Positions 35,305-64,000 are shown, counted from the stretch's first letter. The stretch: DNA of 64,000 bases from Phallusia mammillata (GCA_965637545.1 OZ281497.1:18538001-18602000); one strand, 5' to 3'. The notes: generated by a model from the letters alone, not told the origin. Made by a program: numbers and translations.

Positions 35305-38300
35305 ATGTTAGAAAACTACTGGAAATGTGGGTTTGTTGCGGTGCTGATTTTTATCGCCCGAGTCGAAGCCCAAAGTGATGATGGTAAACTGTTGTCCTAA
35401 ATTAGCCATAGTAGTAACAAAAACTCTTACCGTAAATTAATATTGTGCGGCATTGTCTTTGAAAAATATTTCTGGAGGCGTAAAAAAATGTTACAAACAA
35501 AAGCTTTAAACGTTAATACTAATTGTTTACTAACAGATAGGTTTAGCAAACTAAAGTATTTTATTGGTTATTTTGTACTGATGAACTAAAAATGCGCCCT
35601 AAACGTTTGGGTAAAATCGAATATTTGGCCAATTCTGACCTGCCCTAAAGCAACATACCCTACAAATGCTTTACAAGACATGTTTGACACATTTGTATGT
35701 CTCCAACAAAGTGTGCTGTGACGTTTAGAAACACCTTTGAAAATATGAGATGCATGAAAGGTAAAGCATTTTGCAGCCAATTTTAGGGCATTTGTGGGAA
35801 CCCAAAATAGTTACAGGGTTACTTATTAGTAATTGTAACAGAAAAAAACAAATGTTTTTTTTTTGTTTTTGTTTTGTTTAAACTTGACTGAAACCCTTCA
35901 CGTAAAATCAAGTAAATCCCATTGCTCAATGCATCACTAAAATATTGCATTGTTTGCGATCGAATAAATTCCAGGTTATATGCCATATGAATTAAAACAA
36001 TATTTGGCGGTAGAAACTGGCACAATATTTTTTGTGTTGAAAACATATCTTGGCTTCAATAACAATTAAAATCTGCTGGTGAAAATCTAACGGTAAAAGT
36101 TTTTCGTAACTTACATTGCAACTTGCAAACAAATTATCGCTTTTAGAATTTAAAATGTTGAATATGTTAAACTCGTTTTTCACCTTCTCAAGTGACTTTT
36201 CTGGTGCCTGAATGTATTTTTCACCAACAAAATTTCCATATCGTGCACATTTCCACTGCAATTTGAAGTTAAAAACTTGAAATCGCTATTTTGTGGCGAA
36301 GTATGATAATATAATCTGTCGTCGTGCGCCTGGGGGAACCTGTTACCTTTCACGATGTATTTACATACGTACCTCACCATGAAATAAAAAAACATGTCAA
36401 ATTTCTCAAGTTTAACGATTGTTTTATCGCTTGTATTTTATTGCATACAGACTCGTTTGACATTGATGACGCTATGGCTTCGATTGTTACAAGTGCGGAT
36501 GAGATTTCAGCTCAGATTGCAAACTTTCACAACTATTCATACGATGATCCAATGAACATGATGATATACGATAGTGGCTCGGGAATGTACGTAAAAGGAA
36601 ACGAGGTAAATCCTTCTCTTGTACCATTATCTTCGCTTCGTTTTAATAACCAAAGCAATCGGACGTACAAGCTATCACTTAGGTATTGAGATATACTTGT
36701 TTACTAATAAATTGAACACACTTCTTGCGTGAAGAATTTGATGTTGCAAAACGGTATCAAAGAGTTCGCCGAAATAATTAAACCATTTTGTCATGTTAAA
36801 AAATGTTTATGTACAAAAATATTTCAGATTAAACTATTGGTGAACGGCAGCACAACGGAGAAAGTCATGTATGGACAAACTTACAGGTAGATGCCATGGT
36901 ACGATGTTGTGAGACAGCTTGTAAGTTTAGACAAAAATAAATATATTTTAGGGACAAAAATTCCGTTTTCTCATCGGTCGCTATACACCCCTTTGTCGCC
37001 CTCTGGAGGATAGAAAAAAGTTACAACAGCAAATATATTATCCAGGTAAGTTGGTAATATTGTTTCCCCGTCCTTTATGTGTAATACGATTAATAGTTCT
37101 GCACATGGTATTGAATGTTTTCGTTGTCTAAGATGTAGCTTTATGGTATTGAGACAAGGCAAAGCTTTGAATATTCGCCTTGTCTAAAGTAATTGCTGGT
37201 AACAGGACGTAATTTGACTACATTTATAAAAAGATAAACTATCTTGTGCCGGAGGAAACTTGGGTAACCTGTTTGGCGCAAAAACTCTCCATTAATTGAA
37301 AATATTTTTATATTGTACGCAACGCAGAATTAATAAAATGTAAAAAATAATCAGATGTTACTCATTGGGAAATCGAATACACGAAGTTACTTGACTTGAC
37401 ATGCAAATTGAACGTAACTCGGGCGAGTCGTGCTAAACATTTTGCTCGAATGAAGAAAGCAGTTTCGTCGTGTAATGTTGCGCTTTATCTTCAGGTCGTT
37501 TCAGAATTCGGTTCAGACGACTCTACGAAAAACGACAGATTTTACGACACTTTGGAGATTGGTGATTCACTTGTTGATCTTGTTGGATTTCAATTATTAC
37601 ACGCAAACTACGCACCATCAGTTTGTGAAGTGTTTTTTCTAGTGAGAAATCTTACGACAGAAGTAAGAGTGACGTTTTACATAAAATCTAATCGAGTAAA
37701 GCTTACTTCAAACACCCATTTAAACACAACAGTTGCCTGCTGGTAGTGGTCCAAGTCTAACCTCATCAGAATACTCAGAAGAGTTTTCACCAAAGTCTGT
37801 CGTCCATCAAGGGATTGTGTATGGAGAAGTTTTGGAGCGAATTTTGTTGGGTTACACGCTGTTGTCAAAGTCAGTAAAATCTGTTTTACAGAAACGTAAG
37901 CTCTTGAGGTAAATTTTTGACAACGTTATTTTTTTACAGAAAAGACGGAGTTGAAGTTACAAAGTTGGAAATAAGAAACACGATCAACAAACTACTAGGA
38001 AGTTTTTTGACCAAACAACAGAAACGTAAGTGCTTTCTAGGGTAGGCTACTATTAAATCCATACTTTACTATATAGTGTACAACATTAAATTATGTAAAC
38101 ACTGACTTTATAAGTTGTGACGTATTTGCCGAAGACCAGCAACCTGCAACAAAACTCTCTTTTACAGCAACATCTGAGATCACACCGACGAAAGAAATAA
38201 CTGAAACTACTTCCGATCCACCAACTTCAGCTACAAAAACGACGGAAGCATCAACTGAAACTACTTCCGATCCACCAACCTCAGCTACAACAACGACGGA

Positions 38301-41300
38301 AGCAACAACTGAAACTACTTCCGATCCACCAACTTCAGCTACAACAACGACGGAAGCAACAACTGAAACTACTTCCGATCCATCCACTTCACCTACGACA
38401 ACGACGGAAGCAACAACTGAAACTACATCCGATCCACCAACTTCGGCTACAACAACGACAGAAGCAACAATTGAAACTACATCTAATCCACCAACTTCAG
38501 CTACAACAACGACGGAAGCAACAACTGAAACTACATCCAACCCACCAACTTCAGCAACAACAACGACGGAAGCTACAACTGAAACTACATCCGATCGACC
38601 AACTTCAGCTGCAACCACGACAGAAGCAACAACTGAAACTACTTCCGATCCACCAACTTCAGCTACAACAACGACAGAAGCAACAACTGAAACTACTTCC
38701 GATCCACCAACTTCAGCTACAACAACGACGGAAGCTACAACTGAAACTACTTCCGATCCACCAACTTCAGCTACAACAACGACGGAAGCTACAACTGAAA
38801 CTACTTCCGATCCACCAACTTCAGCTACAACAACGACGGAAGCTACAACTGAAACTACTTCCGATCCACCAACTTCGGCTACAACAACGACGGAAGCAAC
38901 AATTGAAACTACATCCAACCCACCAACTTCAGCTACAACGACGACGGAAGCAACAACTGAAACTACATCCGATCGACCAACTTCAGCTGCAACCACGACA
39001 GAAGCAACAACTGAAACTACTTCCGATCCACCAACTTCAGCTACAACAACGACAGAAGCAACAACTGAAACTACTTCCGATCCACCAACTTCAGCTACAA
39101 CAACGACAGAAGCAACAACTGAAACTACTTCCGATCCACCAACTTCAGCTACAACAACGACAGAAGCAACAACTGAAACTACTTCCGATCCACCAACTTC
39201 AGCTACAACAACGACGGAAGCAACAACTGAAACTACTTCCGATCCATCCACTTCACCTACAACAACGACGGAAGCAACAACTGAAACTACATCCGATCCA
39301 CCAACTTCGGCTACAACAACGACGGAAGCAACAATTGAAACTACATCTAATCCACCAACTTCAGCTACAACAACGACGGAAGCAACAACTGAAACTACAT
39401 CCAATCCACCAACTTCAGCTACAACAACGACGGAAGCAACAACTGAAACTACATCCAACCCACCAACTTCAGCAACAACAACGACGGAAGCTACAACTCA
39501 ATCTACGTCCAACCAACCAACTTCAGCTACAACAGCGACGGAAGCAACAACTGAAACTACATCCGATCGACCAACTTCAGCTACAACAACGACGGAAGCT
39601 ACAACTCAATCTACGTCCAACCAACCAACTTCAGCTACAACAGCGACGGAAGCTACAACTGAAACATTAACATCAGGCACAACAAGGACAGGCGTGGCAT
39701 CTACCACTACATCAAATCCACCTGTAACAACCACGACAAGGATGGAAGCAACAACTGATACTTTGTCAAAAACACCAGGTACAACACCGAGCAGTAAAAA
39801 CTACATACACAATCAAAATATGAAAAAAAAATATTTTTTTTTGCTTTGAATCAATTTCTTAAATTGTTACACATTTCCTTAATTTTAAAAAAAAAATTTA
39901 ACCAAATTTTCAATCAACTTTTAGCTGCGATAAGAATGGATGAAATCCGGCAATTGTTGCAGTCAACTAGTTTTACCAACATCGTGGATGGATTTTTTCC
40001 TTATTCTTACGACAATTCTGACTCAAACATGATTCAAGATGGTGGAAATGACATGTACGATGATGGAAACAAGGTTTGTAGGATTGCATAGGTTAGAAAT
40101 CAAATGAATTAATTTTTATCTGAATTTGGCAGGTTTATTTCACCGTAAATGGAAACCAAACCAGGGCGAAGTATGACCAAACTTACAAGTAAGTAACTAT
40201 TATGTCACGTTTTGATTTTGCAACAAACAGTTTGCCTGCAAAGTATTTTGAGTCATCAACTTTCATTTGATACTTTCCTGTCCTTTTTTACACAGTTGGC
40301 CAAAATCTTCTTTTTCGACAATCGCAAGTCACCCATTTTTTGCAATCTTTACCATTGACAATAATATGGAAGGCGCTGAACCGAGAAACTTCTCCATACA
40401 AGTGGGTATACTGTCCAGATGTCATTGATAAGATCGACGCCAGTTTCATCTATAGGATCCGTGAATGCTTTTCCAAAATATAGAAGTGCTTTGACTTTTG
40501 CAGGTTGTGTCCAACCTCGGAGCGGATGGAAATGGAGAGTATTCTAACGAAACTGGTTTAATTACTAGCAACAATTTCACATTGTCTTACCACGTAGCTC
40601 AGGTGTACGGAACCCAAGATCCCAGTGTCTGCGAAGTGTATTTTCACGTTTACAAGGTAAAATTTGACAAAAACACTTATACTTGTTTGATGTGTAAAAA
40701 TATTGCCTGAAGAGCGAAGATTAACAATTACAATGTTGAAATGTTTGTTTTTTACTTTCCACTAAACCACAAATATTTAGATTCCAAGCGGAGAGTTGTC
40801 CTTTACGTCACCCCAACAAGATAGTGAGGGAATGGCCAACTTTGTAAACCTCACGGATATCACTGATAGTGCATATCTGGGATATACGTTGTTATCCAAG
40901 TAAGTCTCATCTAAAAATTGCTGGGCATAATTTGTAGCAGCGTGATTGTTTATAACTTACTAACTATTCAAATATTTTAAATTTTCAGACCGCTTGGAGT
41001 CAAATTGTCTTCAACCGAAATACTAGAAACTATGGAACTATTGTTGGAAACAGTCACGATCAGAAAAATTAATACAGAAGGTCAGATTGATTTATTACTC
41101 TCTCTTATTACTCTCAAGTCGGTTTAATATGGATTAACCAGCAATCATGAGAGACAAACGACTTTTGTTTGTACAGTTTTTCTACAAACTGAAGCCATGC
41201 TGGATAGACTTGGGGCAGTTAATTTGACAAGCCATTTGCCAGACTTTCACAAATATTTTTATGATGATACCACTGACCCTGTTAACTCGATTGTGGATGG

Positions 41301-44300
41301 AGACAGTGATATGTATGATGAAGGCAATAAGGTACACTCGGTCACTGATGTGTAAAGTGAATCATTTTTTTCTTTTTCTTGAAATCAATTTGAAACATTG
41401 AAAAACTAGCTTACCTGTTTAATTAACTTTTTTAATTTTAGGTTATTTATAGTTTATTGCTTTAAATTAGCTTTGTATTTTAGGTTTATTTTGGTTTAAA
41501 TGGAAAGAAGTTGTTTGCCGAATACAACAAAACTTACAAGTATGTTTTCTTTGTAAAACGCAAGGCCATAGGTAACGTTCAAAATGTTTATTCAGGCGAG
41601 CGGACTTCTCCTTTTCCACACTTGCTACTCACCCCTTCATAGCATTTTTCAACATAGATGCCGCAGAACAAACCAACAGAAACTATTCTATAGAGGTATA
41701 AATATCATTTAGGACAGCGGTTCTCAAACTTTTTGTCATAATGGCCCCTTCGCATTTTTTTCGAGAACCCACAGTGTAAGCTAAGTATATTCATAAAATT
41801 TAAAATACCTTGGCAAAGTAAAACTGTCGAGTTACCAACCTAAAATTTTATTCCTTCCGTCCGAAAGCATTCCCAAAACAAAATACAGAATGAATTTAGT
41901 TTAGTTTCGTTAGAACACTTTGCGTGGGAATGTTTTAACGGCAATTTATTGCGTCACAATCAAGACCAAAACAATATAAACATAGTGCGCGAACAATCGC
42001 CTCTGATCGCTACTTTAAAATGAAGTAAAGAACCACTTCTTGTCATTCGTTTGACACTTGACACTCGTTTGTCTATCTCATTTTTGCTCACACACTCGCA
42101 AGATCTCATTTTACATAAGATTGTAGAAATACTTTAGGCTCCTCGCGGTCCTTCTGAAATCGCGTGGAGGACTCTGAATGGACCGCGGACCCCAGTTTGA
42201 GAACCGCTGAATTGTTATGGTGTGATTGGGAAATGTTTTGTATCTCAACGCGAATTAGACTGAGTTTACTGTAACCTAACTGGATTTTTTTTATAAAAGC
42301 ATGAATTGTTCAGGTAACTTCAAATCTTGGAGCTGATGGATTCGGATTTATTCAGAATTTTTCTGGATCTGTGTTCAACGGCGGATACAGTCTTTTTTTC
42401 GAAGGTATCCAGGTTTACGAAGCCCTTGATGCAAGCGTGTGTGAAGTGTTTTTCTATATCTCTCAGGTAAGTTTTCGCCAGTTTGGTCTTACAGCTTAAA
42501 GTAACAAATAACTGAAAAAAATGTTTTTTCAATGAATAACTGCATACATGTTTGATCTTACAATTGCAAAACTGTGTAGTATTTTTTTAGTTTACACACA
42601 ATAAACTTGCAGAATCAAACTGGAAAAGAGTTTACCTTTTCTTCTCCGTTGCGCGGACGGCGCAGTCTCCGCAGTGAAGCTTTCTTAAGTGGAAGAATCG
42701 ACAGTGCTGTGTTTGGTTACATGCTGCTTTCGACGTAAGATTGGCAAATTGTAAATTTTTGCAAATAACAAGTAATCCCCTGCTGATGAACTTGAACAAA
42801 ATAGTTTTTTTCATGAATTTATGAGCGAAATTTATTTGTACAGCAATGCTCCTGGTCGTCAAATAACGCAAGCGGAACTTGAAACAACAATGTTGAAAAC
42901 ACTTGCTGTGATAACAGACACTGGTAAGGGTAAAGCGTTTTCCAGTCTTAAAAACCTTAAACCTTGTACAAACAACAAAATGTCTTTAGATTTACCCATT
43001 GATCAAAACGTCAATTCAGCAACCACCACCAAAACTGATGACACAACAACAGCTACCCCAAGTTTGACGTCACCTACTAGTCAATCAAGTATGTCATCGT
43101 TTCGTTTACCACACATAATTACGTCAGAAATTTTTTAATTGTTTTACATTTTTGTTGTTAGTCGGTATAACCGTCACAACTACTTTAAGCACTGCCGATC
43201 AAACCAGCACCACAGGTAAAAACTTATATTGTTTAGTGGGTATTGCCTTTGCAAGTCTTTGACACATTCAAACAAAGATAGCATTTTCAATTCCATTTTT
43301 GAGTTACTGATAAGTAAAAAGGGCCTCATATATATAATCCAAGTATTAAACTAGTGTCAGAAAAAACTACGCCGTTACAGGTACAACCAATGTGACATTG
43401 ATGACTGGAACTTCTTAAGCGTTGTTTATTGGTATATTTTTTCGACTTGTTTGCAACTCGATTATGGATAATCTAAAATGTTAAATAGATTTGGTTTCTT
43501 TGTAGCTGTCGAAACAGTAGCCCAATCTTCTATTTAATCTTCCTTCAACATAAAATTATGTAAACGCTGACTTTATAAGTTATGACGTATTTGCATTTAT
43601 AGAAGCAACCTGCAACAAACATATCTTTTACAGCAACATCCGAGATCACGCCGACGGAAGCAATAACTGCGGTTACATCCGGTCCAACGACTTTAGCTAC
43701 AACAACGACGGAAGCAACAAGTGAAACTACATCCGATCCACCAACTTCAGCTACAACAACGACGGAAGCTATAACTGAAACTACATCCAACCCACCAACT
43801 TCAGCTACAACAACGACGGAAGCAACAACTGAAACTACATCCAACCCACCAACTTCAGCTACAACAACGACAGAAGCAACAACTGAAACTACATCCAACC
43901 CACCAACTTCAGACACAACAACGAAGGAAGCAACAACTGAAACTACATCCAACCCACCAGCTTCAGCTACAACAACGACGGAAGCAACAACTGAAACTAT
44001 ATCTGATCCACCAACTTCAGCTACAACAACGACGGAAGCAACAACTGAAACCACATCCAGTCCACCAATTTCAGCTACAACGACGACGGAAGCAACAAGT
44101 GAAACTACATCCAACCCACCAACTTCATCTACAACAACGACGGAAGCAACAACTGAAACTACTTCCGACCCACCAACCTCAGCTACAACAACGACGGAAG
44201 CAACAACTGAAACTACATATGATCCACCAACTTTAGCTACAACAACTGAAACAACACCGAGTACATCAACTCCAGATACAACAACGACGGAAGCTACAAC

Positions 44301-53300: not shown

Positions 53301-56300
53301 ACATGTATGATTATGGAAACCGGGTGAGTTTTTAAATAAATCCTAATTTGTTTTACTGTTTTATGTGTTTAATCTGTTTTGCATGCCTAAAAATTGTTAA
53401 CTATTCGGTTTTATTCTCTTTAGATATATTTTGCGGCGGATGGTATCGATACTTTTGCTGAATATAACCACACCTACAGGTTTGTACAGGAGTACAATGT
53501 CACCTAATATCAATTACAATAGTGATAAACTTTTCCTAATTGTTTTAAAGACGAGCTGACCATTCGTTTTCCGTGCTAGCAAGTCATCCATTTGTCGCCT
53601 TCTTTTTTATTAACTCCACTCAGAAAACCAATAGAACATTTTCGATACAAGTAAGAGGAAAGAAATCTAATCTTCGACAAGAAACCTTTGTAAACAATTG
53701 TACATCCTCTGTGTCAACTAACAGGTTGTTTCGAACCTTGGCGCCGATGGAACTGGATCGTTCGCAAACTTCTCTGGATCTGTATCTCTTGGGGATTACG
53801 AATTAACATTTAAAGGAGTTCAGGTTTATGAAGCACGAAGTGACGCGAGCGTTTGTGAAGTGTTTTTCTACTTGTCAAAGGTAAAGTGTACAATTTTACT
53901 GTTCGCCTCGTATTTAGGTTGCATTGTACATCAATATCGCCGAGCAAACCGTTAAAACGTAAACTTTTGACATCCCTATTGTGAAAATTGAAAATAATTG
54001 TGAGAATTACTGTAGGTTAAGATTCTATAGACGTTAAAATGTCGGACATATTAGCAGTGCTTTTAAAGATTTTTCGGACACAGATTTTATGCCGAAATTC
54101 CAAACATGTCCCAGCCCTGTCATCCTGCCCATTTAAAGACGCGTATTCCTCTTTTTTATTTTAACAGATTCGGCTCTACTAGTTCTTTTCTTTTCGTCAT
54201 GCATAAAATACCTTCCGCGTAAACTTTTGTTTTTTTTGTGATCCTCATTCGGAAATGAAAATTTAGCTCATACTTTTTTATCAAAACAACCCACAGAATC
54301 AAACCGGGGAGACATTTTCATTGTCCTCACCGGACCAGAGTCGAGGTAATATAGCAAGTAAAGCCGAATTAAAAGGAGAAGTCGACAATGCTATCTTCGG
54401 CTACATGCTGTTATCAACGTAAGTCGAGTTTACATCTAAAGATATAGCTTATTAGACTATATATCGAGTAAATACATTTAAGCTATTCTTCAGTTCATTT
54501 TGCCATCATAAAATACAAACTCGCAAAAGTAGTTTTACTTGCTTTGAGAAGAAAGGCATACCAATAATACAAAACGATTGATTATTTTCATTGTCTTTGG
54601 CGTTCATTCGATTTAGTTGTAATTTATTAAGATACGCATGTTCATACAAAAAAAACGTGCGTTTATTTTTGCGGAATGGCACAACTTCTGAGGCTTAATA
54701 GTTTTTTAAATTGTACCCACAATTGTATCCATTTTATTACAACTATTTTTCCAAATAAAGTATCTATTTGCTTAGAAAATCTCCTGGTCGACAAATTTTG
54801 CAAGATGAGTTAGAAGCCACAATGCTAACTACGCTGAGTGTGATGACAAACCAGGGTAAGAAAAGCTTCATCTTATACGTTTTGTGTAATGCGTGAAAAA
54901 GTCTTAATCCTGAAACAAACCATGTTTATGATGGCTTTACATTTTTACACAAATACATCCACTATTTAGTAGAAATTCAGAAAAAAAACGTAAGTTGTTT
55001 AATTTATTCACTAAGAACAAAATTGCCAGCGTTGTAAAATAAAACGTAGACATTTTATTGGTCAAACGTTTAAAACTACCTTTCGAATCTGGGTCTTTGT
55101 GTACTTATGTTTAGTTTATGTTTTGACAGAAGTACCACAGGTTTCCACATCGGAACCGACTGTAACTACGCTAGAAGATACAACCACGACTTTAACTACA
55201 CCAGGTATTTTGAAATTCACTTACCTTGAAAAACACAAATACTGAAGATGACCTTGAACCTTTATTTTTGTAGTAGTGACGACTACAGTTATAACTACCA
55301 CAACTTTGGTTCCCGACGGTAAGAAACATTACGTTCGGTAAAAAATGTTGATTGTATGATATTACGGTAAATGATGCTAACAATAAAAAACTCTTTTGAT
55401 TGATTTCGTTTTTACAGAAATTTTTTAAACAGCACGTTTAAACTAAAAAAAGTCAAAAAAGTCAAAAACATTTATTTACATTGTCACTTTATCCAATTAT
55501 CATTGATAAACAGTTTCGTAAAAAAGCAAGGACACCGAAAAAACTATTGGTTTGGTTAAAACTTAAAATTTTCTTTTACGATAGCGGCGGCGGAGGCTAT
55601 GAAAGTATTGAAAACGTTGCAATCTGCCCCTTTAATACAACATATAAGGGGGTTTTATTATTATAAATACGATGATTCAAATCTCAAGATGATTGATGAC
55701 GGCGGAAAAGACATGTATGACGAAGGAAATAAGGTTTGTCGACTTGTAAAATTTGTAATATTTTTCTGCACTAATATGAATGTCAATGACTTAATTTGAC
55801 CAGTGTGGTTTGAACAGGTTAATTGACCCGTTTGTTGCTTCGGCAGGTTTTTTTCACTGTAAACGGAAATGAAACGCAAGCAAAGTATAACCGGTCATAC
55901 AGGTAAGGGATATTAATGTTACAGAAAAAAACACATTAAGTTTGTTGTTCCGGACTATTTGTTTTTTACTAATTTACTCTACTTTACTCAGTGGTCCCAC
56001 ATATGCTTTTACCTTAAATCTTGGTCACCCGTTTATTGCGTTCTTTTCTATTGGAAAAATCCAGGACGATGCAGAACCAATGAACTATTCCATTCAAGTT
56101 AGTTGCGTTTTTAGATCTAAGAATTAAATATTTTTATTGTTTTGTGTGATTAGGCAACTATTGTCAGAACGCATTTCACAAAAGTTGCTCACACAAGGGT
56201 ATGTATCACAATTCGGGAACAATTTTATTGGAAAAAAAATTAAGAAAAAACTGTACATTATAAAACCGCAGCGATTATTCTATTCCTCAAATGTTGTGAA

Positions 56301-59300
56301 AACGCATGCTCAGTAGAGCTTCAACAACTGGCATGTGGTATTTAATGCTGGGCCCAACAATGGTAGTTCTATTAATAGCGTAAACACGTCAATGAATTTT
56401 GCAAATTTAAGGTGAAGTCAAATCTTGGAACTGATGGAATTGGGATTTATCGTAATGAATCTGGTACAATAACAAGAGGCAACTTCACACTAAAATACTA
56501 CGCCGCACAAGTGTATGGTACCAATGACCCGAGCATATGTGAAGTGTATTTCCACATATTCCAGGTAAAACTCAGAAACCGCACAAAGATTTTTACACTT
56601 TGTTTTTCGGTATACCTAAGTTATATTTTGTTGGCGAAACCTTTACGGCACCTTTTATAACATGTTTGCGAAATCCGCCATTCAAAATACGTTGACTTGT
56701 CTAGTCGTGGCCTCTTATAATCCAGTCGCTTAACTTAAAAGTAATGATTTTTCTCACCCATTGCAGGAGCCCAGTGGAAAGTTAAGTTTCTTCTCACCAA
56801 ATCAGGATTTCCAAACCATGGAAAACTTTGTAAACTTAACGGCAAATAGAGGATTCGCTGGCCTGGGATACTTATTACTTTCAAGGTAACTGAGCGAAAA
56901 TTAATAAATTTAGGTAAACTATCAAGTGGATATGATTTTAAAACACGAGTCTATAAAATGGTTATTTGAGTATAAGGGTCGTTTGTTTATTTCGCTACCA
57001 CTGCAAATCTATCTTTGATAATAGTTCGCTACCAACACGATGTATTGTTTTGTTCTAGGGATGTTGGAATGCAAGTTTCATCATATGACATACGTTTTAC
57101 ATTGGAACAAGTGTTGGGGACGCACTTTCCAGGTATCGTCGCTCTTGATGGTAAGTAAACTTGGTTTGGATGTACGCACAAAACTGATCAAGATTGTGAA
57201 ATAGAGGTGCTCCGAAAAAATTGTTTACTGTAACATTATCTTATTTGGAATATTTTTGGCAGAAACAAACATGTTGATACAACGACTTCAATCAACAAAC
57301 TTGACACAACACGTGATCAATTCTAATCGGTACACGTATGACGATACGTCTTATCCTATTAATTTTATTAATGATGGAGAAGGTGATATGTACGACGGTG
57401 GAAATCGGGTAAATTTGTCTTTATTTTTTCCTGAAAGTTTGTGATTTTGACTTTTTCGTGCATTTTATCGTTTTCATATGCTTCCACATACAAAAACTGT
57501 TTTAATTTAGGTGTTTTTCATCGTTGACGGACTCGAGCAACAAGCTCAATACAACGAGACATACCGGTACATAAATTAGGTAATTACTGGAAAATGATTA
57601 GTTACTTTAAGTCGATATGATTATTTAGACGCGACAACTTTACTTTTGTCACTCTTGCTACCCAACCTTTCATTGCATTTTTCAACATCGACGACCCACA
57701 ACAAGTTGAGGGCAACTATTCAATAAAGGTATGGGCTGATTTAACCTGAACACCGTGCATTTGGATTTTAGAAGAAAAACAACGTAAATAATTTCTTACT
57801 TGAAATAAATTTGTTCCCGCAACAACATAGGTGACTTCGGATATCGGAGCGGATGGAAATGGAATATTCGAGAACTTCTCAGGTTCAGTGTCTCAGGATG
57901 ATTACGACTTGTTCTTTGAAGGAAGTCAGGTTTTTGGCGCTAATGATCCAAGTGTATGTGAGGTGTATTTCTACATTGCACAGGTAAAAAAATTTTTGGT
58001 AAATTACATTGTGGTTAGTAATGTCATATTTAATTCAGTGAACATTGTGACTAAGGATATATAAACCATTGTGACCAAGGACTAGGGATTTATCCAAATA
58101 ACTTAAAATGTAGTTTTATGTGCATTATTATTAAAAAACTTGTTTTGTAGAATTCAAGTAACCTCAAATTCACATTTTCTTCGCCAATTCGCGACCGAAG
58201 TAACTTGCGAAATCAAGCCAGCTTACAGGGAAAATTTGGCAAAGCCATTTTGGGTTTTATCCTGCTATCAACGTAAGTTTAGATTGTTAACGTTTTGACA
58301 GGCACTATATGTGGGTGTGAATCAAGTATTTATATTTCCGCAGTAAAACTCCCGGACGTAGAATCAGTCAAGAGGAACTGGAGGCGACAATGCTTACAAC
58401 ACTTGGTGTTTTTATCGACCAAGGTAAACACTGGAAAATAACGAAATATCGTAAAAATAAAATTTTCTGAGAACGCTACTTGCAACATTAAAACGATCGC
58501 TGTTTGTCCGCAACAGCTTGTGATCACTACATACAAACTCTTTAACAGTAACGATTGGAATAAACTACTAACTTATATAAGCAGGGTTCAGTGTTCTTTT
58601 ACAACTAAGTTGTGGTGATTAATATAAGGCTGATAAAGTTTACGACTCGCCTATTTATTGTGACAAATAAAGCTAACCATAACGATTTGTACGTAATTGA
58701 ACCTAAATATTTTGTTTTCAGTGTTGCTTTGAAATAAACTCTTATAAAAAAAAACTTATCAAAGTTGTAAATTAAACGCAAACTTCGCAAAAAAATTAAC
58801 TACACATCGAAACACATTGTATAAAATTTTAAAACTAACTTATCAATTAAATACCCAATTTTTCATCAATCAACAGAAATTCCAAACAATTCTACCGTGC
58901 CACCAATAACAACGTCAACAAGTAAAGCAACGACAGCAATATCTACAACTTTTGCAACAGGTATGCTACAAACGACACAGTTTATGGAGTGTGGTTGGTT
59001 GTTTTCAAAATTTTATGGTTGAAAAACATTCTTGTTTAAAAAAAATTTAAAAAGTTCAGTAAGTCAAATTTTGTTTGCTGTAATTTACAATAATTAGTGT
59101 TTATCCAAACCTTTTTATAGTTCCATCAAACACAATATTATCACAAACAACACGCAAACTTTTACATAATATGTGATAAAGTGGACTTATTCATGCAATT
59201 TCGTTGAAGACATTAAAAATGTTTTTTTCTTACATTAGTAAACACAACAGTTGCCACGACCTCCCAACTTGAAACTGTAACCGCTACTGCAGGTTGGTAT

Positions 59301-62300
59301 TTGCAAATATTTGTGTTCTGCGTTCTCCGCTCTTCGCAAGTTGGCAATTACTAGTAACCTTTAAATTCCATCTGAACAACTCTCATTGTCAACTTAGTGC
59401 CTGACGTGGAGTTGTCTGAAGTGCTACGGTCCGCTTCTTTGAGAGGTCACATAAACAAATTTTATTTTTATCGATACGATAATCCAAATCTTATTACCAT
59501 CCGCGACGGAGGAAGGGACATGTATGATGGAGGAAATTCGGTTGGTGGAGTTGTATTTCGGAAGTTTTACTCGCAAACTGATTAACCTTTGACTTTTGCA
59601 GGTATTTTTTACGGTGAACGGATATGAAACTCGAGCGGTTTATAACGAAACCTACAAGTAAGTTTCGGTTGAAAACTGTTCCGAAAACTTTATAGTTGCT
59701 TTGTCACGGCCAGTATTTATTTTTTATCTTGCATAGTGATGAAACCTACTCCTTCTCTTCAATTATTGGTCATCCCTTTATCGCGTTTTTTACAATCAAA
59801 AAAGTCCTGGGCGATGCACAGCCAATGAACTACTCCATCCAGGTGTGTAGAATGTTTTGCACGTGAGGCGCACTTTTAATTTGACTGACTTTCATGTGAT
59901 TTGGAAATCAAACTAAATTTATAAAATAAAAATCAGTCAAATGAAAAGTCAAGTCACTTAGCTCTCAACTTTTAAACCTTCTATATTTTAGGTGAAGTCA
60001 AACCTCGGAGCTGACGGATCTGGAAGTTATCGTAACGAATCTGGAACGATATCTCGGGGCAATTATACATTGAATTACTACGCCGCACAAGTGTATGATG
60101 CCCCAGACCCGAGCGTTTGTGAAGTGTATTTTCACATATTTCAGGTAAAATTATGAAATACTGTTAGGCCATACTTGTCCCTCCCGAATTGATTTGCTTG
60201 TCTAATCAATTGTAGATAATCAATTGTTTCATTAAAGCCCAATTGACGTTCTATTAAGAGTCTTTGCCTTTACCAAGAGTCGAACTCCTACTGACTTGAC
60301 TTGACTTGACTTGAGGCTCGACTAATAGGACTCGTTACCCAACCCTGCCAAGAACTGTTGCATTTGTATTACTTCTATTGCAGAAACCCAGCGGAGTATT
60401 AAATTTCACCTCGCCAAAGCAAAATCGCGAAAGCATGGAAAACTTTGTAAACTTGACAAATAGTAGGGAGTCTGCTACCCTGGGTTACCTGTTACTATCA
60501 CAGTAAGTTTTTTTCCGATAAATTAGTTACCGCAAATATATGTGCTATTTAAAACGAAAAGCAAGGTTACCAAAAAACGTCCACTTAAGTCAAATAGTAA
60601 TATTTTAGATCACTGCTTATTCGGTTTGTTTTTAGTTTTAAAATTACTTAAAAAAATAGATAACCATAGTAAGTGTAAGTTTTTTTACAGGTTTCCTAAT
60701 AATCGAGTGTCATCAGATGACATTCGAGTTTCAATGGAAAGACTTTTGGAAGCTAAGATTTCAAACACCATAACACCTGATGGCAAGTTTACATACAATA
60801 AACCTCTAATTTTTGTAAGATACATAATCGGATATTTGGTTTGCTTTGGCAGAAACGACCGTATTGTTGGATCGACTTCGATCGGCAAACTTGACAAAAT
60901 ATGTGATTAATTCTTATCAGTACGTCTATGACGATCGTTCCGATCCAATTGACTCAATTCAAGATGGAGGTAACGATATGTACGATACAGGAAACCAGGT
61001 TTTTGAATTCATTGCATTTTTATTTTCATTCACCGTTTGAGTTGCAATTGTAACGTTACCTCACATTTCTTAAGGTTGACTTCAGGGTAGATGGCTTTAA
61101 AAGACGTGCTCAATATAACCAGACCTATAAGTAAGCATAGTTGTTTGTCAATTAAGGCACAATATAACAAATTGAGACTGTTTGATTTATACTTATTCAG
61201 ATTCGACGATTTTACTTTTGCCACACTTGCTGTTCATCCTTTCATCGCTCTTTTCAATATAAACGCTTCTGCGCCAATAAACAGAAGCTATTCAATAGAG
61301 GTATGGAGTAAATCATCTTAGATCTTGACATTCAGTAAATTTCACAATTTCATTTAACCTACTTTTCGGTCGTAATATTAACACAGGTGTTGTCAAATCT
61401 TGGAGCCGACGGAAGAGGAAACTTTCAAAACTTCTCTGGATCTGTGTCTCTGGATGATTTTTATTTGTTCTTCGAAGGAAATCAAGTTTATGAAGCCAAT
61501 GACCCGAGCGTGTGCGAAGTGTATTTCTACATTGCAAAGGTAAAATCACGTTATATTTCTATTTGTATTTTAATCAACAAGTTGAGTGAATTAATGATAT
61601 TTTTTTACATTACTCTCAGATCTAATTAATTAGTTGAAACTTTAAAATGTTTTATTTTTATCATTGCATAAGTTTCCATCGATTGTTGAATTGTTGTAAT
61701 AAAACTGTGCTATATAGAATGAAACTGACATCAATTTCTCGTTTTCTGCTGCAACTCGTGATCGAACGGGCTTACAAAATCTAGCTACTATACAAGGAAA
61801 TTTCACAAAAGCGGTGTTCGGTTTTATCCTTCTATCGACGTAAGTGTAGTTAAATAATGCTGTTTTAAAACACTGTGTTTTCTGCTATAATTACCACGTA
61901 CATGTTGTGAAAAGTACAATAACAAGACAACATGCATGTGTGTAAACCAACTGTTTCTATTTTTGTAGCAAAACTCCCGGACGTAGAATCAGTCAAGCGG
62001 AACTGGATGCCACGATGCTTGCCACACTTGGTGTGATTACAGATAAAGGTAAAAATCGATATTATACCTAGTTCCAAACACTAAAGAAAAAAGTTGATTG
62101 AAAAACGAATTCCAGATCTTCTATGGCTTGCAACAAATGCGTGTTATGACATAAAGCTGTTTCTCAAAACTACAAATTAAAACAATGTGTATCCATATTT
62201 GCAAATGACGCGACTGGTATAATATTTGAATTTACATCAATCAACAGAAATTCCGGAAATATCTACAGTTATACCAATGACAACATTACCAGTTAATACA

Positions 62301-64000
62301 ACAACCACAACCGTCACAAAAGGTAACATGAAGAATTTAATTTGTAATTTTCAAAACTAAATTGCATGGAGTCAATTGTTTGCATAAAAGGGCATACTAA
62401 TTAAATACCATTAAAATCTCATTTTCAAAACTAGAAACACCTGGAGTATCTCCAACAGTGCAAAACACAACATCACCAACTACAGCAACAACGATAACGT
62501 CGACAATAGGTATGATAACTGCAGGCTTTTTTTATCCAATTTTATGTACGAGGTTAAAAAATTGTCTTCATACACGCCAGTACATCTTACAGAAGCGCAG
62601 ATCGGCAATCTGAACTGTAACTTCGATTACTGGCAATCATACTTTGCTGTGAACATTTGCTTTGATGCAGCGGAATAAGATCGGATTATTTTCTTGTTTT
62701 AGTGCCTGAAACGAAATCGGGTTTGTTAGATGCCACGCAGGCCAATCTTCTAATAAGTCACATAAACGGGTTTTATTCATATCGATATGATAACCCAAAT
62801 CGTCTCGCTATTCGCGATGGTGGAAGTGACATGTATGATGGAGGAAATCAGGTCTGTAAACGTTTTTATGATGTGGCCACTTTTCCTTTTTATAGATTCA
62901 CAAATACTGTTTTGCTTTGCAGGTTTATTTTACTGTAAACGGAAATAGAAGCCAAGCGAGATATAATCAAACTTACAGGTAAGTTTTTGCGCAAACTTTA
63001 GTAGCCTGTCGTTTCAATGCCTTGTCCAAGGATGGCAAACTCTAAACAAGCTGCCTCACTACAACCAGCTTATTCGAAATGAAAGGTGCAGCGACAATGT
63101 ATAATTTTCAACAGCATGTTTCTTAAAATCATTGCTGCGAAAGAGACAACAACACTAGCTCGCTGTTTCAACTAACTTGAGAATCAATTACAAATCTCTG
63201 TTCTTGACATGTGGGCATTTTAATAATAGGCCTGCCCTACAGTGCGTGTAACCCTCCTTTTGCATAGGGGTCAGCCCGCAAGCACTAAATATTTAGCAGT
63301 GACGTCACAAACTTTTTTGAGCACTATTTTGGTACAGGGACATTGTGATGAAATCATATAATAAATAACTTAAATTCCAGTTTTAGAAAATTTTGATATT
63401 ATCTGCAAATGGTAACGATGCAAAAATGACCGTTTAATAAACATTTATTATGCGTACCAGTACGGTGATACGGTACGCTTTTGGTACGGTGGTACGCTCT
63501 ATAGTGAAGAACCGTACCCGTACCTCAGCTTTCTTTGCGTACCGAACCTACGTACCGTACTTTTTGATGAAATTAGCTGCCTTGTGAAGGTTTCGTTATT
63601 ATTTTTTTCTGCTTCTATGCAGTGATGCAACCTACTCTTTCACTACCATTGCTGTTCATCCATTCATCGCATTTTTCACTATTGAAAAAATCCTGGACGA
63701 TGCAGAACCAATGAATTATTCTATAGAGGTGCTTTGACATAACTGCATTTTGCATGTTAATAAATGACAAACATTAATGAAGACATTGTATCAACAACAA
63801 AAATTGAAAAAAAACAGTCATTTGCTAACAATAGTATACGGTTGTTAGGTGTCTTTTGTTTGAAACGTTACTTGTAATTTAGGTGAAGTCGAACCTCGGA
63901 GCTGACGGATCTGGAAGTTATCGTGATGAATCTGGAACGATATCTCGGGGCATTTATACATTGAATTACTATGCCGCACAAGTGTACGATGCCTCAGACC
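35305..64000 (+). CDS. Giant multi-exon secreted or cell-surface glycoprotein: signal peptide, at least 12 copies of an uncharacterised ~225-aa module, Thr-rich mucin linkers; 3' end lies beyond the window
   Basis: Signal-peptide exon 35305-35383 (MLENYWKCGFVAVLIFIARVEA-QSDD). Modules at 36451-38025, 39925-41080, 41177-42923, 44548-45703, 45800-47556, 48414-52991, 53169-54855, 55585-57150, 57263-58423, 59398-60782, 60853-62048 and 62703->64000 (partial). Complete modules have six exons with intron phases 1-0-2-0-0-2-1 and shared motifs. Confidence 0.85.
38203..39660 (+). repeat. Coding VNTR, 27 x 54 bp (ETTSDPPTSATTTTEATT), in mucin-like exon 38168-~39778
   Basis: Exact 54-nt period. The Thr/Ser/Pro frame is open from acceptor ctctcttttacAG (38167); it is absent from the ORF track because it has no start codon. 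Confidence 0.95.
41715..42209. mobile_element. hAT-type MITE (copy 1)
   Basis: TIRs cagcggttctcaaact / agtttgagaaccgctg; no clear TSD. Confidence 0.8.
43669..44245 (+). repeat. Second 54-bp mucin VNTR (about 10.5 units) in exon 43634-44329
   Basis: Same unit as 38203-39660, open Thr-rich frame. Confidence 0.9.
46338..46841. mobile_element. hAT-type MITE (copy 2, carried along by the segmental duplication)
   Basis: Near-identical to 41715-42209, with identical flanks. Confidence 0.8.
49044..49383. mobile_element. hAT-type MITE
   Basis: TIRs caatgctcttcaacc / ggttgaagaggactg; TSD-like gtctaaac / atctaaac, offset by 2 nt. Confidence 0.65.
50476..51059. mobile_element. hAT-type MITE with eroded left TIR, host of a nested element
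   Basis: ggttctc...atggacc motifs at the left end; right end ttgagaaccactg with atggacca subterminal repeats. Confidence 0.65.
50538..50795. mobile_element. Nested MITE with 8-bp TSD
   Basis: TIRs catgggcgccg / cggcgcccatg; perfect TSD ggaccagt at 50530-50537 and 50796-50803. Confidence 0.9.
51145..52226 (+). mobile_element. Helentron-associated non-autonomous element (HINE/DINE-like) with internal ~160-bp tandem repeats
   Basis: 5' ttatgggtcccc plus stem-loop, T-rich simple tract, 160-bp repeats at 51248 and 51408 with decayed copies, 3' ggggacc subterminal inverted repeat, hairpin gtttttgc-ct-gcagaaac, ends in TT; no TSD. Confidence 0.65.

What the first reader, a model, noticed from the sequence alone, without database searches (positions are those of the whole stretch)
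35305..64000. Unrecognised giant extracellular protein built from paired copies of a DGGxDMYDxGN module on mucin stalks
Seen: a signal peptide, one divergent N-terminal module (DSGSGMYVKGNE), then strictly alternating a-type modules (...AEPxNYSIQ, NESG, YAAQVY, YFHI) and b-type modules (NFSGSV, FEGxQVY, FYI, PGRQ/RI). Each a-b pair is separated from the next by Thr-rich linker exons. The module is about 225 aa (module 2 is 675 nt), encoded by six exons, and begins and ends in phase 1, the symmetric layout of shuffled extracellular domains. I cannot assign it to any named family. Inference: the Asp-rich DGGxDMYDxGN loop could bind Ca2+, and the architecture suggests a multivalent lectin, adhesin or mucus/tunic scaffold.
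Basis: partly seen in the sequence, partly recalled or inferred. Interest (0 to 1): 0.85.

Follow-up and report, generated by a model that had tools for sequence, protein, structure and literature searches.

The report
Sea-squirt mucin with microbial-type binding modules
A sea squirt makes and splices a giant secreted, sugar-coated protein strung with at least twelve copies of an undescribed 220-residue module. The same module also occurs in phage proteins that often sit beside tail-fibre genes, in giant-virus bins and in bacterial surface proteins, so it probably binds sugars or cell surfaces and may have entered tunicates from microbes.

Summary
The + strand carries a signal-peptide exon (35305-35383), one divergent module, then alternating a/b modules up to the window end. 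There are 11 complete modules of 657-699 nt, each six exons with phase 1 at both ends, plus two long Thr-rich repeat exons and short Thr-rich linkers. RNA contigs from two studies are spliced at seven GT..AG junctions exactly as modelled. One contig links modules 8, 9 and 10, so this is one expressed gene.

No Pfam, NCBIfam, PHROG or PDB sequence match covers the module. Three corrections apply:
- Relatives are already in databases as "uncharacterized protein" (Phallusia mammillata CAB3263223.1, Ciona LOC104266555, Clavelina, Styela).
- The module is not animal-specific. Clear homologues occur in uncultured phages (several next to tail-fibre genes), giant-virus bins, and giant T9SS surface proteins of Bacteroidota and Verrucomicrobiota. 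Every named eukaryote with it is a tunicate.
- The predicted fold (pLDDT 88) is a galactose-mutarotase-like beta supersandwich, as in the N-domains of GH65/GH94/GH116 enzymes.

Best reading: a multivalent glycan- or surface-binding mucin-like protein. Calcium binding, ligand and tissue are untested. The scan had not noted this family before.

The parts
35305..35383 (+). Exon 1: start codon and hydrophobic signal-peptide-like N-terminus (MLENYWKCGFVAVLIFIARVEAQSDD), with a phase-1 GT donor after 35383
   Evidence: Judged by eye, no signal-peptide predictor was run.
36451..38025 (+). Module 1 (divergent; DSGSGMYVKGNE loop). Six exons: 36451-36605, 36828-36886, 36952-37045, 37495-37662, 37733-37869, 37940-38025
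   Evidence: It pairs with module 1 of P. mammillata P0001 in the trees (support 100).
38168..39793 (+). Mucin (PTS) exon 1, about 542 codons, holding 27.5 copies of a 54-nt / 18-aa Thr-rich repeat (38182-39665)
   Evidence: The exon ends are inferred from AG/GT sites and phase 1-1, and were not checked with RNA.
39925..41080 (+). Module 2 (a-type), six exons, 675 nt
41177..42923 (+). Module 3 (b-type), six exons, 666 nt. It follows module 2 directly, with no linker.
43634..44329 (+). Mucin (PTS) exon 2, about 232 codons, holding 11 copies of the 54-nt repeat (43652-44246). A short Thr-rich linker ORF lies before it, within 42926-43135.
   Evidence: The exon ends are inferred.
44548..45703 (+). 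Module 4 (a-type), 94% identical to module 2
45800..47556 (+). Module 5 (b-type), 100% identical in protein to module 3. It belongs to a 3.65-kb tandem duplication that is 95% identical in DNA (39916-43546 against 44539-48180).
48414..52991 (+). Module 6 (a-type), with two long introns (48563-49600 and 50436-52435)
53169..54855 (+). Module 7 (b-type)
55585..57150 (+). Module 8 (a-type). Four of its junctions are seen in RNA contigs.
57263..58423 (+). Module 9 (b-type). Its exons lie on the same 3,435-nt RNA contig as modules 8 and 10.
58877..58960 (+). Short Thr-rich linker exon between pair M8/M9 and pair M10/M11. A second small linker exon is likely.
   Evidence: RNA depth in bin 58849-59045 and the contig length arithmetic; splice sites
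59398..60782 (+). Module 10 (a-type). Its last exon ends at a GC donor (GATG|GCAAGT).
   Evidence: (loose end ...ACACCTGAT before 60852; joint 60502>60691)
60853..62048 (+). Module 11 (b-type). Junctions 60998>61075 and 61130>61201 are seen in RNA.
62703..64000 (+). Module 12 (a-type), exons e1 to e3 only. The gene runs off the window end.

Best explanation
This is one large ascidian gene, with about 3,900 codons inside the window and more beyond it. It encodes a secreted, heavily glycosylated mucin-like protein.

Behind a signal peptide come one divergent module and then a-b pairs of a roughly 220-residue module. Each module is predicted to fold as an N-terminal helix, a galactose-mutarotase-like beta supersandwich and a long C-terminal helix. 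The C-terminal helix of an a module runs into the N-terminal helix of the following b module. The pairs are spaced by O-glycosylatable Thr-rich stalks.

The module belongs to an undescribed family. The same family forms small phage proteins that in several contigs lie beside tail-fibre genes, parts of giant-virus-bin proteins, and single or tandem modules in giant T9SS-secreted bacterial surface proteins.

The most likely mechanism is inferred, not shown. Each module would bind a glycan or cell-surface ligand through the face that carries the invariant DGGxDM[YF]DxGN, GADGxG and DPS loops. The tandem array on flexible stalks would give high-avidity binding or cross-linking, for example of particles, microbes or matrix polysaccharide in mucus or tunic.
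For: Shown:
- Gene structure, intact frames and a/b alternation.
- Expression as one spliced RNA. Contigs from two studies carry seven GT..AG joints identical to the model, while the DNA run is unspliced. A single 3,435-nt contig spans M8 e1 to M10 e1 without a mismatch in most pieces.
- PTS repeats.
- A confident single-module model (pLDDT 87.7, pTM 0.88) and pair model (pLDDT 85.7, pTM 0.70).
- Fold matches almost exclusively to the supersandwich domains of carbohydrate-active enzymes and aldose epimerases: VIA-align Z 8-9.8 with 170-190 residues aligned, and ESM Atlas TM 0.55-0.58 to GH65-type proteins.
- BFVD matches to uncharacterised phage proteins (TM 0.59-0.70) and to a prasinovirus PA14-domain protein.
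- Sequence homology to phage, viral and bacterial proteins. The tunicate profile gives E 1e-23 to 1e-9 against 5.8 billion proteins. A tunicate-only HMM hits 64 of 65 viral and 77 of 77 bacterial loci at E<1e-5.
- Contexts: tail-fibre PHROGs beside the phage gene in L001, L002/L003, L023 and L031. T9SS sorting domain, HYR, FG-GAP, choice-of-anchor D and S8 peptidase in the bacterial proteins.
- In other tunicate proteins the module is fused to CUB, Sushi, Kringle and collagen plus intelectin-like domains.
Against: - No ligand, metal or binding assay exists, and the fold matches are middling (Z under 10; Foldseek TM 0.2-0.4 against PDB). A shared fold does not show function.
- The supersandwich is catalytic in mutarotases and only accessory in many glycosidases.
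- The strongly invariant acidic residues could equally serve catalysis or a purely structural metal site.
- Some phage copies sit next to DNA polymerase or ribonucleotide reductase rather than tail genes.
- The tissue of expression is unknown because the run metadata are coded.
- I could not inspect model coordinates, so the position of the conserved loops on one face is assumed.
Confidence: 0.5

Rival explanations
1. The protein is a structural scaffold. It would be a matrix component of tunic, test cells or the feeding mucus net, whose modules mainly bind each other or the animal's own polysaccharide (cellulose, sulphated glycans) to build a gel, rather than recognising foreign ligands.
For: - Mucin-type PTS exons and many N-glycan sequons.
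- Fixed a-b pairing with a helical connector, and pTM 0.70 for the pair, which could reflect an assembly unit.
- The family has expanded into many tunicate extracellular architectures.
Against: - No polymerising domains (VWD, CK, ZP) were seen in the 29 kb examined.
- There is one Cys per module. It sits in the CEVYF strand, is also present in phage copies, and is replaced in bacterial copies, so it is unlikely to form intermolecular disulfides.
- The microbial relatives are in host-contact or adhesin-like contexts.
Confidence: 0.25
2. The module is an enzyme or enzyme-derived domain, for example a mutarotase- or epimerase-like or other carbohydrate-modifying activity, and the protein is a tethered multi-enzyme.
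For: - The fold class is shared with aldose 1-epimerases (Z about 8).
- D, D, D, N, H/P-F, G-D-G and D-P-S positions are invariant or nearly so across tunicates, phages and bacteria.
Against: - No Pfam or NCBIfam match to Aldose_epim, Glyco_hydro_65N or any enzyme family.
- Twelve or more tandem copies alternating with mucin stalks is the layout of binding modules, not of enzymes.
- In glycosidases this fold is usually the non-catalytic N-domain.
Confidence: 0.1
3. The array is a decaying or non-functional repeat (pseudogene or assembly artefact), or a set of separate small genes.
For: - A 95% identical 3.65-kb duplicated block could be an assembly duplication.
- The RNA contigs show some module-to-module chimeric joints.
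Against: - All 66 exons of the 11 complete modules keep frame and splice sites with no stop.
- Spliced RNA from two studies agrees exactly with the model and links three modules.
- Orthologous or paralogous multi-module proteins exist in four other ascidian genera.
Confidence: 0.03

Closest known systems
Uncharacterised ascidian proteins: Phallusia mammillata CAB3263223.1 (P0001, 1,914 aa, 8 modules) and Ciona intestinalis XP_078491493.1 LOC104266555 (P0002, 1,724 aa, 7 modules)
   Same: They share the signal peptide plus divergent first module. They have the same a-type and b-type modules, and each window type clusters with the same type in P0001 (support 96-100). They also have Thr/Pro-rich linkers.
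   Different: Per-exon identity to the window is only 40-75%, so the window gene is a paralogue, or the orthologue in another ascidian. The public proteins have fewer modules, no long 18-aa PTS arrays, and in P0001 a less strict a/b alternation. None has a described function, and no paper mentions them.
Galactose-mutarotase-like beta supersandwich domains: N-domains of GH65, GH94, GH116, GH15 and GH63, aldose 1-epimerases, and the YidC P1 domain
   Same: The overall fold is shared: Z 8-9.8, 145-192 residues aligned at 3.3-5.2 A, and TM about 0.55 to GH65-type Atlas models.
   Different: No sequence relationship is detectable. The module adds an N-terminal helix pair and a long C-terminal helix, and it stands alone or in tandem without a catalytic (alpha/alpha)6 barrel.
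Small proteins of uncultured T4-like and other large phages (for example P0139, 295 aa) and giant-virus-bin proteins
   Same: The full-length domain is present with the same invariant DGGxDM[YF]DxGN, GN.GADGxG, DPS[IV]C and LLS motifs and the same C-terminal helix. They give a structural match in BFVD at TM up to 0.70.
   Different: They carry a single copy behind a 40-100-residue N-terminal extension and have no mucin stalks. They lie beside tail-fibre genes in several contigs. No cultured phage in the 50,697-record collection has the gene.
Giant T9SS-secreted surface proteins of Bacteroidota and Verrucomicrobiota (for example Fulvivirga imtechensis AK7, 2,064 aa; Flavobacteriaceae bacterium LYZ1037, 1,630 aa)
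   Same: They contain the same domain, sometimes in 2-3 tandem copies, within secreted multi-domain adhesin-like proteins.
   Different: The bacterial clade is the most divergent (branch about 0.9-1.0). The conserved Cys is replaced (DPSVNHLII). The partner domains are S8 peptidase, HYR, FG-GAP, Ig-like and Por_Secre_tail.
Gel-forming and secreted mucins whose PTS regions are interrupted by globular modules (for example CysD in MUC2/MUC5AC; from general knowledge, not tested)
   Same: Both have long Thr/Ser/Pro tandem repeats alternating with small globular modules in a secreted protein.
   Different: The globular module here is cysteine-poor and of microbial type. No VWD, C8, TIL or CK domains were seen in the part of the gene inside the window.

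Membership tests
Undescribed 'DGGxDM[YF]DxGN' supersandwich domain family (tunicates, phages, giant-virus bins, bacteria) | Significant profile match over the whole roughly 220-residue domain | tested here: met
   The exon-3 profile from the window finds 108 proteins, the best at E 4.5e-159. The tunicate profile finds phage-type proteins at E 1e-23 to 1e-9. A tunicate-only HMM hits 77 of 77 bacterial and 64 of 65 viral loci.
Undescribed 'DGGxDM[YF]DxGN' supersandwich domain family (tunicates, phages, giant-virus bins, bacteria) | The invariant motifs DGGxDM[YF]DxGN, (H)PF, GADGxG, DPS and LLS, in this order | tested here: met
   All are present in the 11 complete window modules and in alignments A2, A3 and A4. 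Module 1 has a degenerate first motif (DSGSGMYVKGN).
Mucins (PTS-domain glycoproteins) | Long tandem repeats rich in Thr/Ser/Pro within a secreted protein | tested here: met
   The 54-nt repeats occur x27.5 and x11. The containing ORFs are 65% T+S+P.
Gel-forming mucins / VWF family | VWD-C8-TIL assemblies and a C-terminal cystine knot | tested here: inconclusive
   None appears among the exons found between 35305 and 64000. The 3' end of the gene lies beyond the window.
Aldose 1-epimerase (PF01263) and Glyco_hydro_65N (PF03636) sequence families | Pfam match above the gathering score | tested here: not met
   No Pfam hit for window exons, tunicate modules, phage proteins or the bacterial domain region. 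Only fold-level similarity was found.
Phage tail fibre / receptor-binding proteins | Membership in a tail-annotated PHROG, or demonstrated virion location | tested here: not met
   The phage homologue itself hits no PHROG. Only the neighbouring genes are tail-fibre families, in 4 of about 7 contexts examined.
Ca2+-dependent lectins | Metal coordination by the Asp/Asn loop and Ca2+-dependent sugar binding | not testable with these tools
   Only conservation of the acidic loop is shown.

The most novel reading that the evidence does not exclude
The module was captured once by the tunicate stem lineage from a virus or bacterium, like cellulose synthase. It then spread by phase-1 exon shuffling into dozens of secreted proteins. 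In this gene it became a mucin-borne array of phage-type surface-binding heads, a host-encoded bacteria- or particle-capturing mucus lectin of a filter feeder. It would be an unreported tunicate HGT family, absent from the 2026 Ciona HGT survey (PMC13390645).
Probability: 0.3. Interest if true: 0.85.

Novelty: new variant of a known kind. Interest (0 to 1): 0.66.

Why it matters
Tunicates are the textbook case of an animal body plan changed by a horizontally acquired gene (cellulose synthase). This looks like a second family of possibly foreign origin that has expanded in tunicates. It has introns, is expressed, is fused to classic animal extracellular domains, and occurs in tunicates alone among named eukaryotes. 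It has no Pfam entry, no paper and no known function.

The finding also gives a first handle on an abundant but unannotated domain of marine and freshwater phages, giant-virus bins and T9SS surface proteins. A ligand found for any one member would annotate all of them.

If the tunicate arrays bind microbes or particles, they would be a new kind of mucus lectin in the closest invertebrate relatives of vertebrates.

Tried and rejected
- **Pfam on ten single exons:** nothing except a chance MGAT2 hit at E 0.19.
- **Rfam on the window:** nothing.
- **PDB sequence search with the domain profile:** only chance hits at E>1.
- **Pfam, NCBIfam and PHROGs on tunicate, phage and bacterial members:** the domain region is never covered.
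- **tblastn of three phage-type members against 50,697 cultured-phage records:** no match.
- **Foldseek against PDB:** only weak matches (TM 0.2-0.4). The VIA-align search was needed to see the fold class.
- **IQ-TREE with the mixture model on 150 rows:** did not finish. I replaced it with FastTree and a 67-row LG+G4 tree. Neither resolves whether the viral or the bacterial clade is nearer to tunicates; the three clades form a star.
- **Literature:** no paper holds the LOC identifiers.
- **Species identification:** not achieved. The run names are coded and the CYP26 exon next door is too short for the length-limited protein search.
- **Intelectin idea:** I considered that the module is a diverged intelectin/FReD domain. 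I rejected it because the FReD-like part lies in a separate N-terminal region of the fusion proteins.
- **Earlier scan notes:** searches by motif word and by sequence found nothing on this family.
Full report
**Method note.** External searches used single exons by window reference, or public homologues by protein id. Exons were joined only inside local scripts that read window.fa, to check frames, lengths and identities and to place the modules in a tree. No assembly gaps (N) occur in the window.

Yes.
- A regular-expression scan of all six frames finds the D[GS]GxDM[YF]DxGN-type motif 13 times on the + strand (36570 to 62816) and never on the - strand. The companion motifs (AEPxNYSIQ, QVY, CEVYF) also occur only on the + strand.
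- tblastn with the exon peptides of modules 2 and 3 recovers every exon type in the same order throughout 36.4-64 kb.
- Codon-level inspection and a constrained search for AG/GT sites give six exons per module, with intron phases 1|0|2|0|0|2|1.
- The 11 complete modules are 657-699 nt long. All lengths are multiples of three, none has a stop, and each has one cysteine and 3-8 N-glycosylation sequons.
- Identities separate the types: a-type (M2, 4, 6, 8, 10, 12) 49-60% among themselves, b-type (M3, 5, 7, 9, 11) 50-62%, a against b 35-42%, and the first module 26-30% to all others.
- The a and b modules of a pair are adjacent, with no linker between them.
- Pairs are separated by Thr-rich exons. 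Two of these are long PTS exons built from a 54-nt (18-aa) repeat, x27.5 at 38182-39665 and x11 at 43652-44246.
- Exon 1 (35305-35383) encodes a hydrophobic signal-peptide-like start and ends in phase 1.
- The block M2-M3 with its linker was recently duplicated. Positions 39916-43546 and 44539-48180 are 95% identical, introns included.

**2. Is it expressed, and as one gene?**

- Five RNA-type runs of the same coded organism, from two studies, hold 20-27% of the sampled words of window:55500-61400. That is roughly the exonic share. Two DNA runs hold 99%.
- Laid on the stretch, the RNA contigs skip seven introns with GT..AG ends at exactly the modelled positions: 55902>55992, 56097>56412, 56564>56767, 56885>57059, 60502>60691, 60998>61075 and 61130>61201, allowing for the stated cut ambiguity. 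The DNA run is colinear.
- One 3,435-nt contig runs from M8 exon 1 through M9 into M10 exon 1.
- The last exon of M10 uses a GC donor (GATG|GCAAGT after 60782). A loose end in the RNA supports this.
- Some back-joints between similar modules in the contigs look like assembler chimeras.

**3. What is the module?**

- Exon by exon, Pfam finds nothing.
- A profile of exon 3 from ten window modules (A1) was searched exhaustively against 1.84 billion representatives. It found 108 proteins.
- The top hits are multi-module proteins: Phallusia mammillata CAB3263223.1 (8 modules), Ciona intestinalis LOC104266555 (7 modules), and proteins of Clavelina lepadiformis, Styela clava and Ciona savignyi. All are named "uncharacterized".
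- The window gene is only 40-75% identical per exon to the Phallusia protein. It is therefore a paralogue, or the orthologue in another ascidian. I could not determine which.
- In other family members the module is combined with CUB, Sushi, Kringle, or collagen plus an intelectin-like FReD piece. One Ciona member is labelled "cortical granule lectin-like".
- An alignment of 39 instances (A2) shows the invariant positions D, M, D, G, N (first loop), P-F and G (GADG).
- This alignment matches no PDB sequence and no Pfam or NCBIfam model.

**4. Fold**

- AlphaFold2 on A2 gives a confident model (pLDDT 87.7, pTM 0.88). It has two short N-terminal helices, a 12-strand beta sandwich and a 25-residue C-terminal helix. 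The DGGxDMYDxGN loop immediately precedes the first long strand.
- Foldseek against PDB gives only weak hits, all to N-terminal domains of GH65, GH95 and GH92 enzymes and PL17 lyases.
- The Foldseek-independent search of 48,161 chains is dominated by the galactose-mutarotase-like supersandwich. It matches GH116, GH94, GH65 and GH15 N-domains, aldose epimerases and YidC P1, at Z 8-9.8 with 145-192 residues aligned.
- The ESM Atlas agrees, with TM 0.55-0.58.
- These Z values are only moderately above the background quoted by the tool. I therefore claim the fold class, not homology.
- A model of an a-b pair (pLDDT 85.7, pTM 0.70) predicts that the C-terminal helix of a continues into the N-terminal helix of b. 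This fits a defined pair unit, but I could not inspect the inter-domain confidence.

**5. The family reaches far beyond animals**

- The tunicate profile finds 250-330-residue metagenomic proteins carrying all the motifs, at E 1e-23 to 1e-9.
- Their contigs are phage genomes with tightly packed co-oriented genes and a T4-type DNA polymerase (phrog_262). A long-tail-fibre-like protein lies immediately upstream.
- A scan of IMG/VR returns 63 loci, on contigs up to 436 kb, including three giant-virus bins.
- BFVD gives structural matches to uncharacterised phage proteins (TM 0.59-0.70) and to a Bathycoccus virus PA14-domain protein.
- Tail-fibre-type neighbours recur in L023 and L031 but not in L008 or L010.
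- No cultured phage in the 50,697-record set has the gene.
- A scan of one genome per prokaryotic species returns 77 loci, mostly Bacteroidota, Verrucomicrobiota and Planctomycetota.
- In bacteria the domain sits inside giant T9SS cargo proteins, sometimes in 2-3 copies. Partner domains are S8 peptidase, HYR, FG-GAP and Ig-like domains.
- An HMM built from tunicate sequences alone hits all 77 bacterial and 64 of 65 viral loci at E<1e-5, so the link is not circular.

**6. Phylogeny**

- Trees of 150 rows (FastTree) and 67 rows (IQ-TREE LG+G4) give three well-supported groups joined almost as a star.
- The groups are all tunicate plus unlabelled environmental eukaryote-like sequences (SH-aLRT 99), viral sequences (95) and bacterial sequences (100, on a long branch).
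- A single origin of all tunicate copies is compatible with the data. The donor cannot be named.
- Every named eukaryote in four independent searches is a tunicate. However, only the short exon-3 profile was searched exhaustively, so "tunicates only" is provisional.
- Introns, spliced RNA and the chromosomal position next to CYP26-like exons exclude contamination.
- The window's a, b and first-module types each group with the same type in the Phallusia protein. The a/b split is therefore older than the split between the two genes.
- The 2026 survey of horizontally transferred genes in Ciona lists eight groups, none of them this family. It states that its pipeline misses low-similarity cases (PMC13390645). 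No paper mentions the LOC identifiers.

**7. Mechanism**

*Shown:* this is a secreted-type, expressed, modular mucin-like protein. Its repeated module has a sugar-enzyme-associated beta-sandwich fold and extracellular, host-contact or adhesin contexts in viruses and bacteria.

*Inferred:* each module binds a glycan or surface ligand through the conserved acidic loops, possibly with a metal ion. Twelve or more modules on glycosylated stalks would then give avidity or cross-linking in mucus or tunic.

Rival readings are given with odds in the fields above: a self-assembling scaffold, a tethered enzyme, and a non-functional array. Calcium binding, ligand and tissue were not testable here.

**8. 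Verdict**

The gene family is catalogued but unstudied. The domain is an undescribed cross-kingdom family with a known fold class, and a single acquisition by tunicates from the microbial world is a reasonable though unproven origin.

Noticed in passing
window 60780-60790: The last exon of module 10 ends at a GC-AG intron (GATG|GCAAGT). The RNA contig's loose end ...ACACCTGAT joined to 60852/60853 supports it.
   Followed up: partly
window 39916-43546 and 44539-48180: There is a 3.65-kb tandem duplication, 95% identical in DNA with introns included. It copies one a-b pair plus its linker, and module 3 and module 5 are identical in protein. It is either a very recent duplication or an assembly duplication.
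   Followed up: partly
window 60228-60424: In the DNA run, summed contig depth jumps to about 3,900 against about 108 elsewhere, and many loose ends occur at 60347-60351. A high-copy repeat, probably a small mobile element, sits in the intron between exons 3 and 4 of module 10.
   Followed up: no
window 48563-49600 and 50436-52435: Module 6 has two unusually long introns. The second holds a 159-bp x2 tandem repeat (51237-51553) and T-rich microsatellites, which may reflect an inserted element.
   Followed up: no
RNA contigs on window 55500-61400: Contig joints go back or jump between equivalent positions of different modules (61302>57909 and 56090>59990, with 5 foreign letters between). These are most simply assembler chimeras between similar modules. 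Module-skipping isoforms are not excluded.
   Followed up: no
P0162, P0053, P0054, P0032 (public tunicate proteins): A tunicate subfamily fuses a collagen stretch and an intelectin-like FReD N-part to one copy of this module. One Ciona member is labelled 'cortical granule lectin-like'. This would be a candidate two-headed lectin.
   Followed up: partly
L002:6241-12204: The phage contig carrying the homologue also encodes HSP20, Cpn10 and a Cpn60 chaperonin, downstream of a T4-type DNA polymerase and a clamp-like protein.
   Followed up: no
L045, L046, L047 (IMG/VR GVMAG bins) and BFVD A0A7S6NY19: Giant-virus bins and a Bathycoccus prasinovirus 'PA14 domain-containing protein' carry the same domain inside proteins of 860 to 3,600 residues. 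The tunicate-only HMM scores these highest per domain (97-100 bits).
   Followed up: partly
L067 and L068 (Nanopelagicaceae chromosome, Aquiluna MAG): Two actinobacterial records carry the phage-type, not the bacterial-type, version of the domain. They are probably prophage or viral contigs binned with the host, which hints at freshwater actinobacteria as hosts of some of these phages.
   Followed up: no
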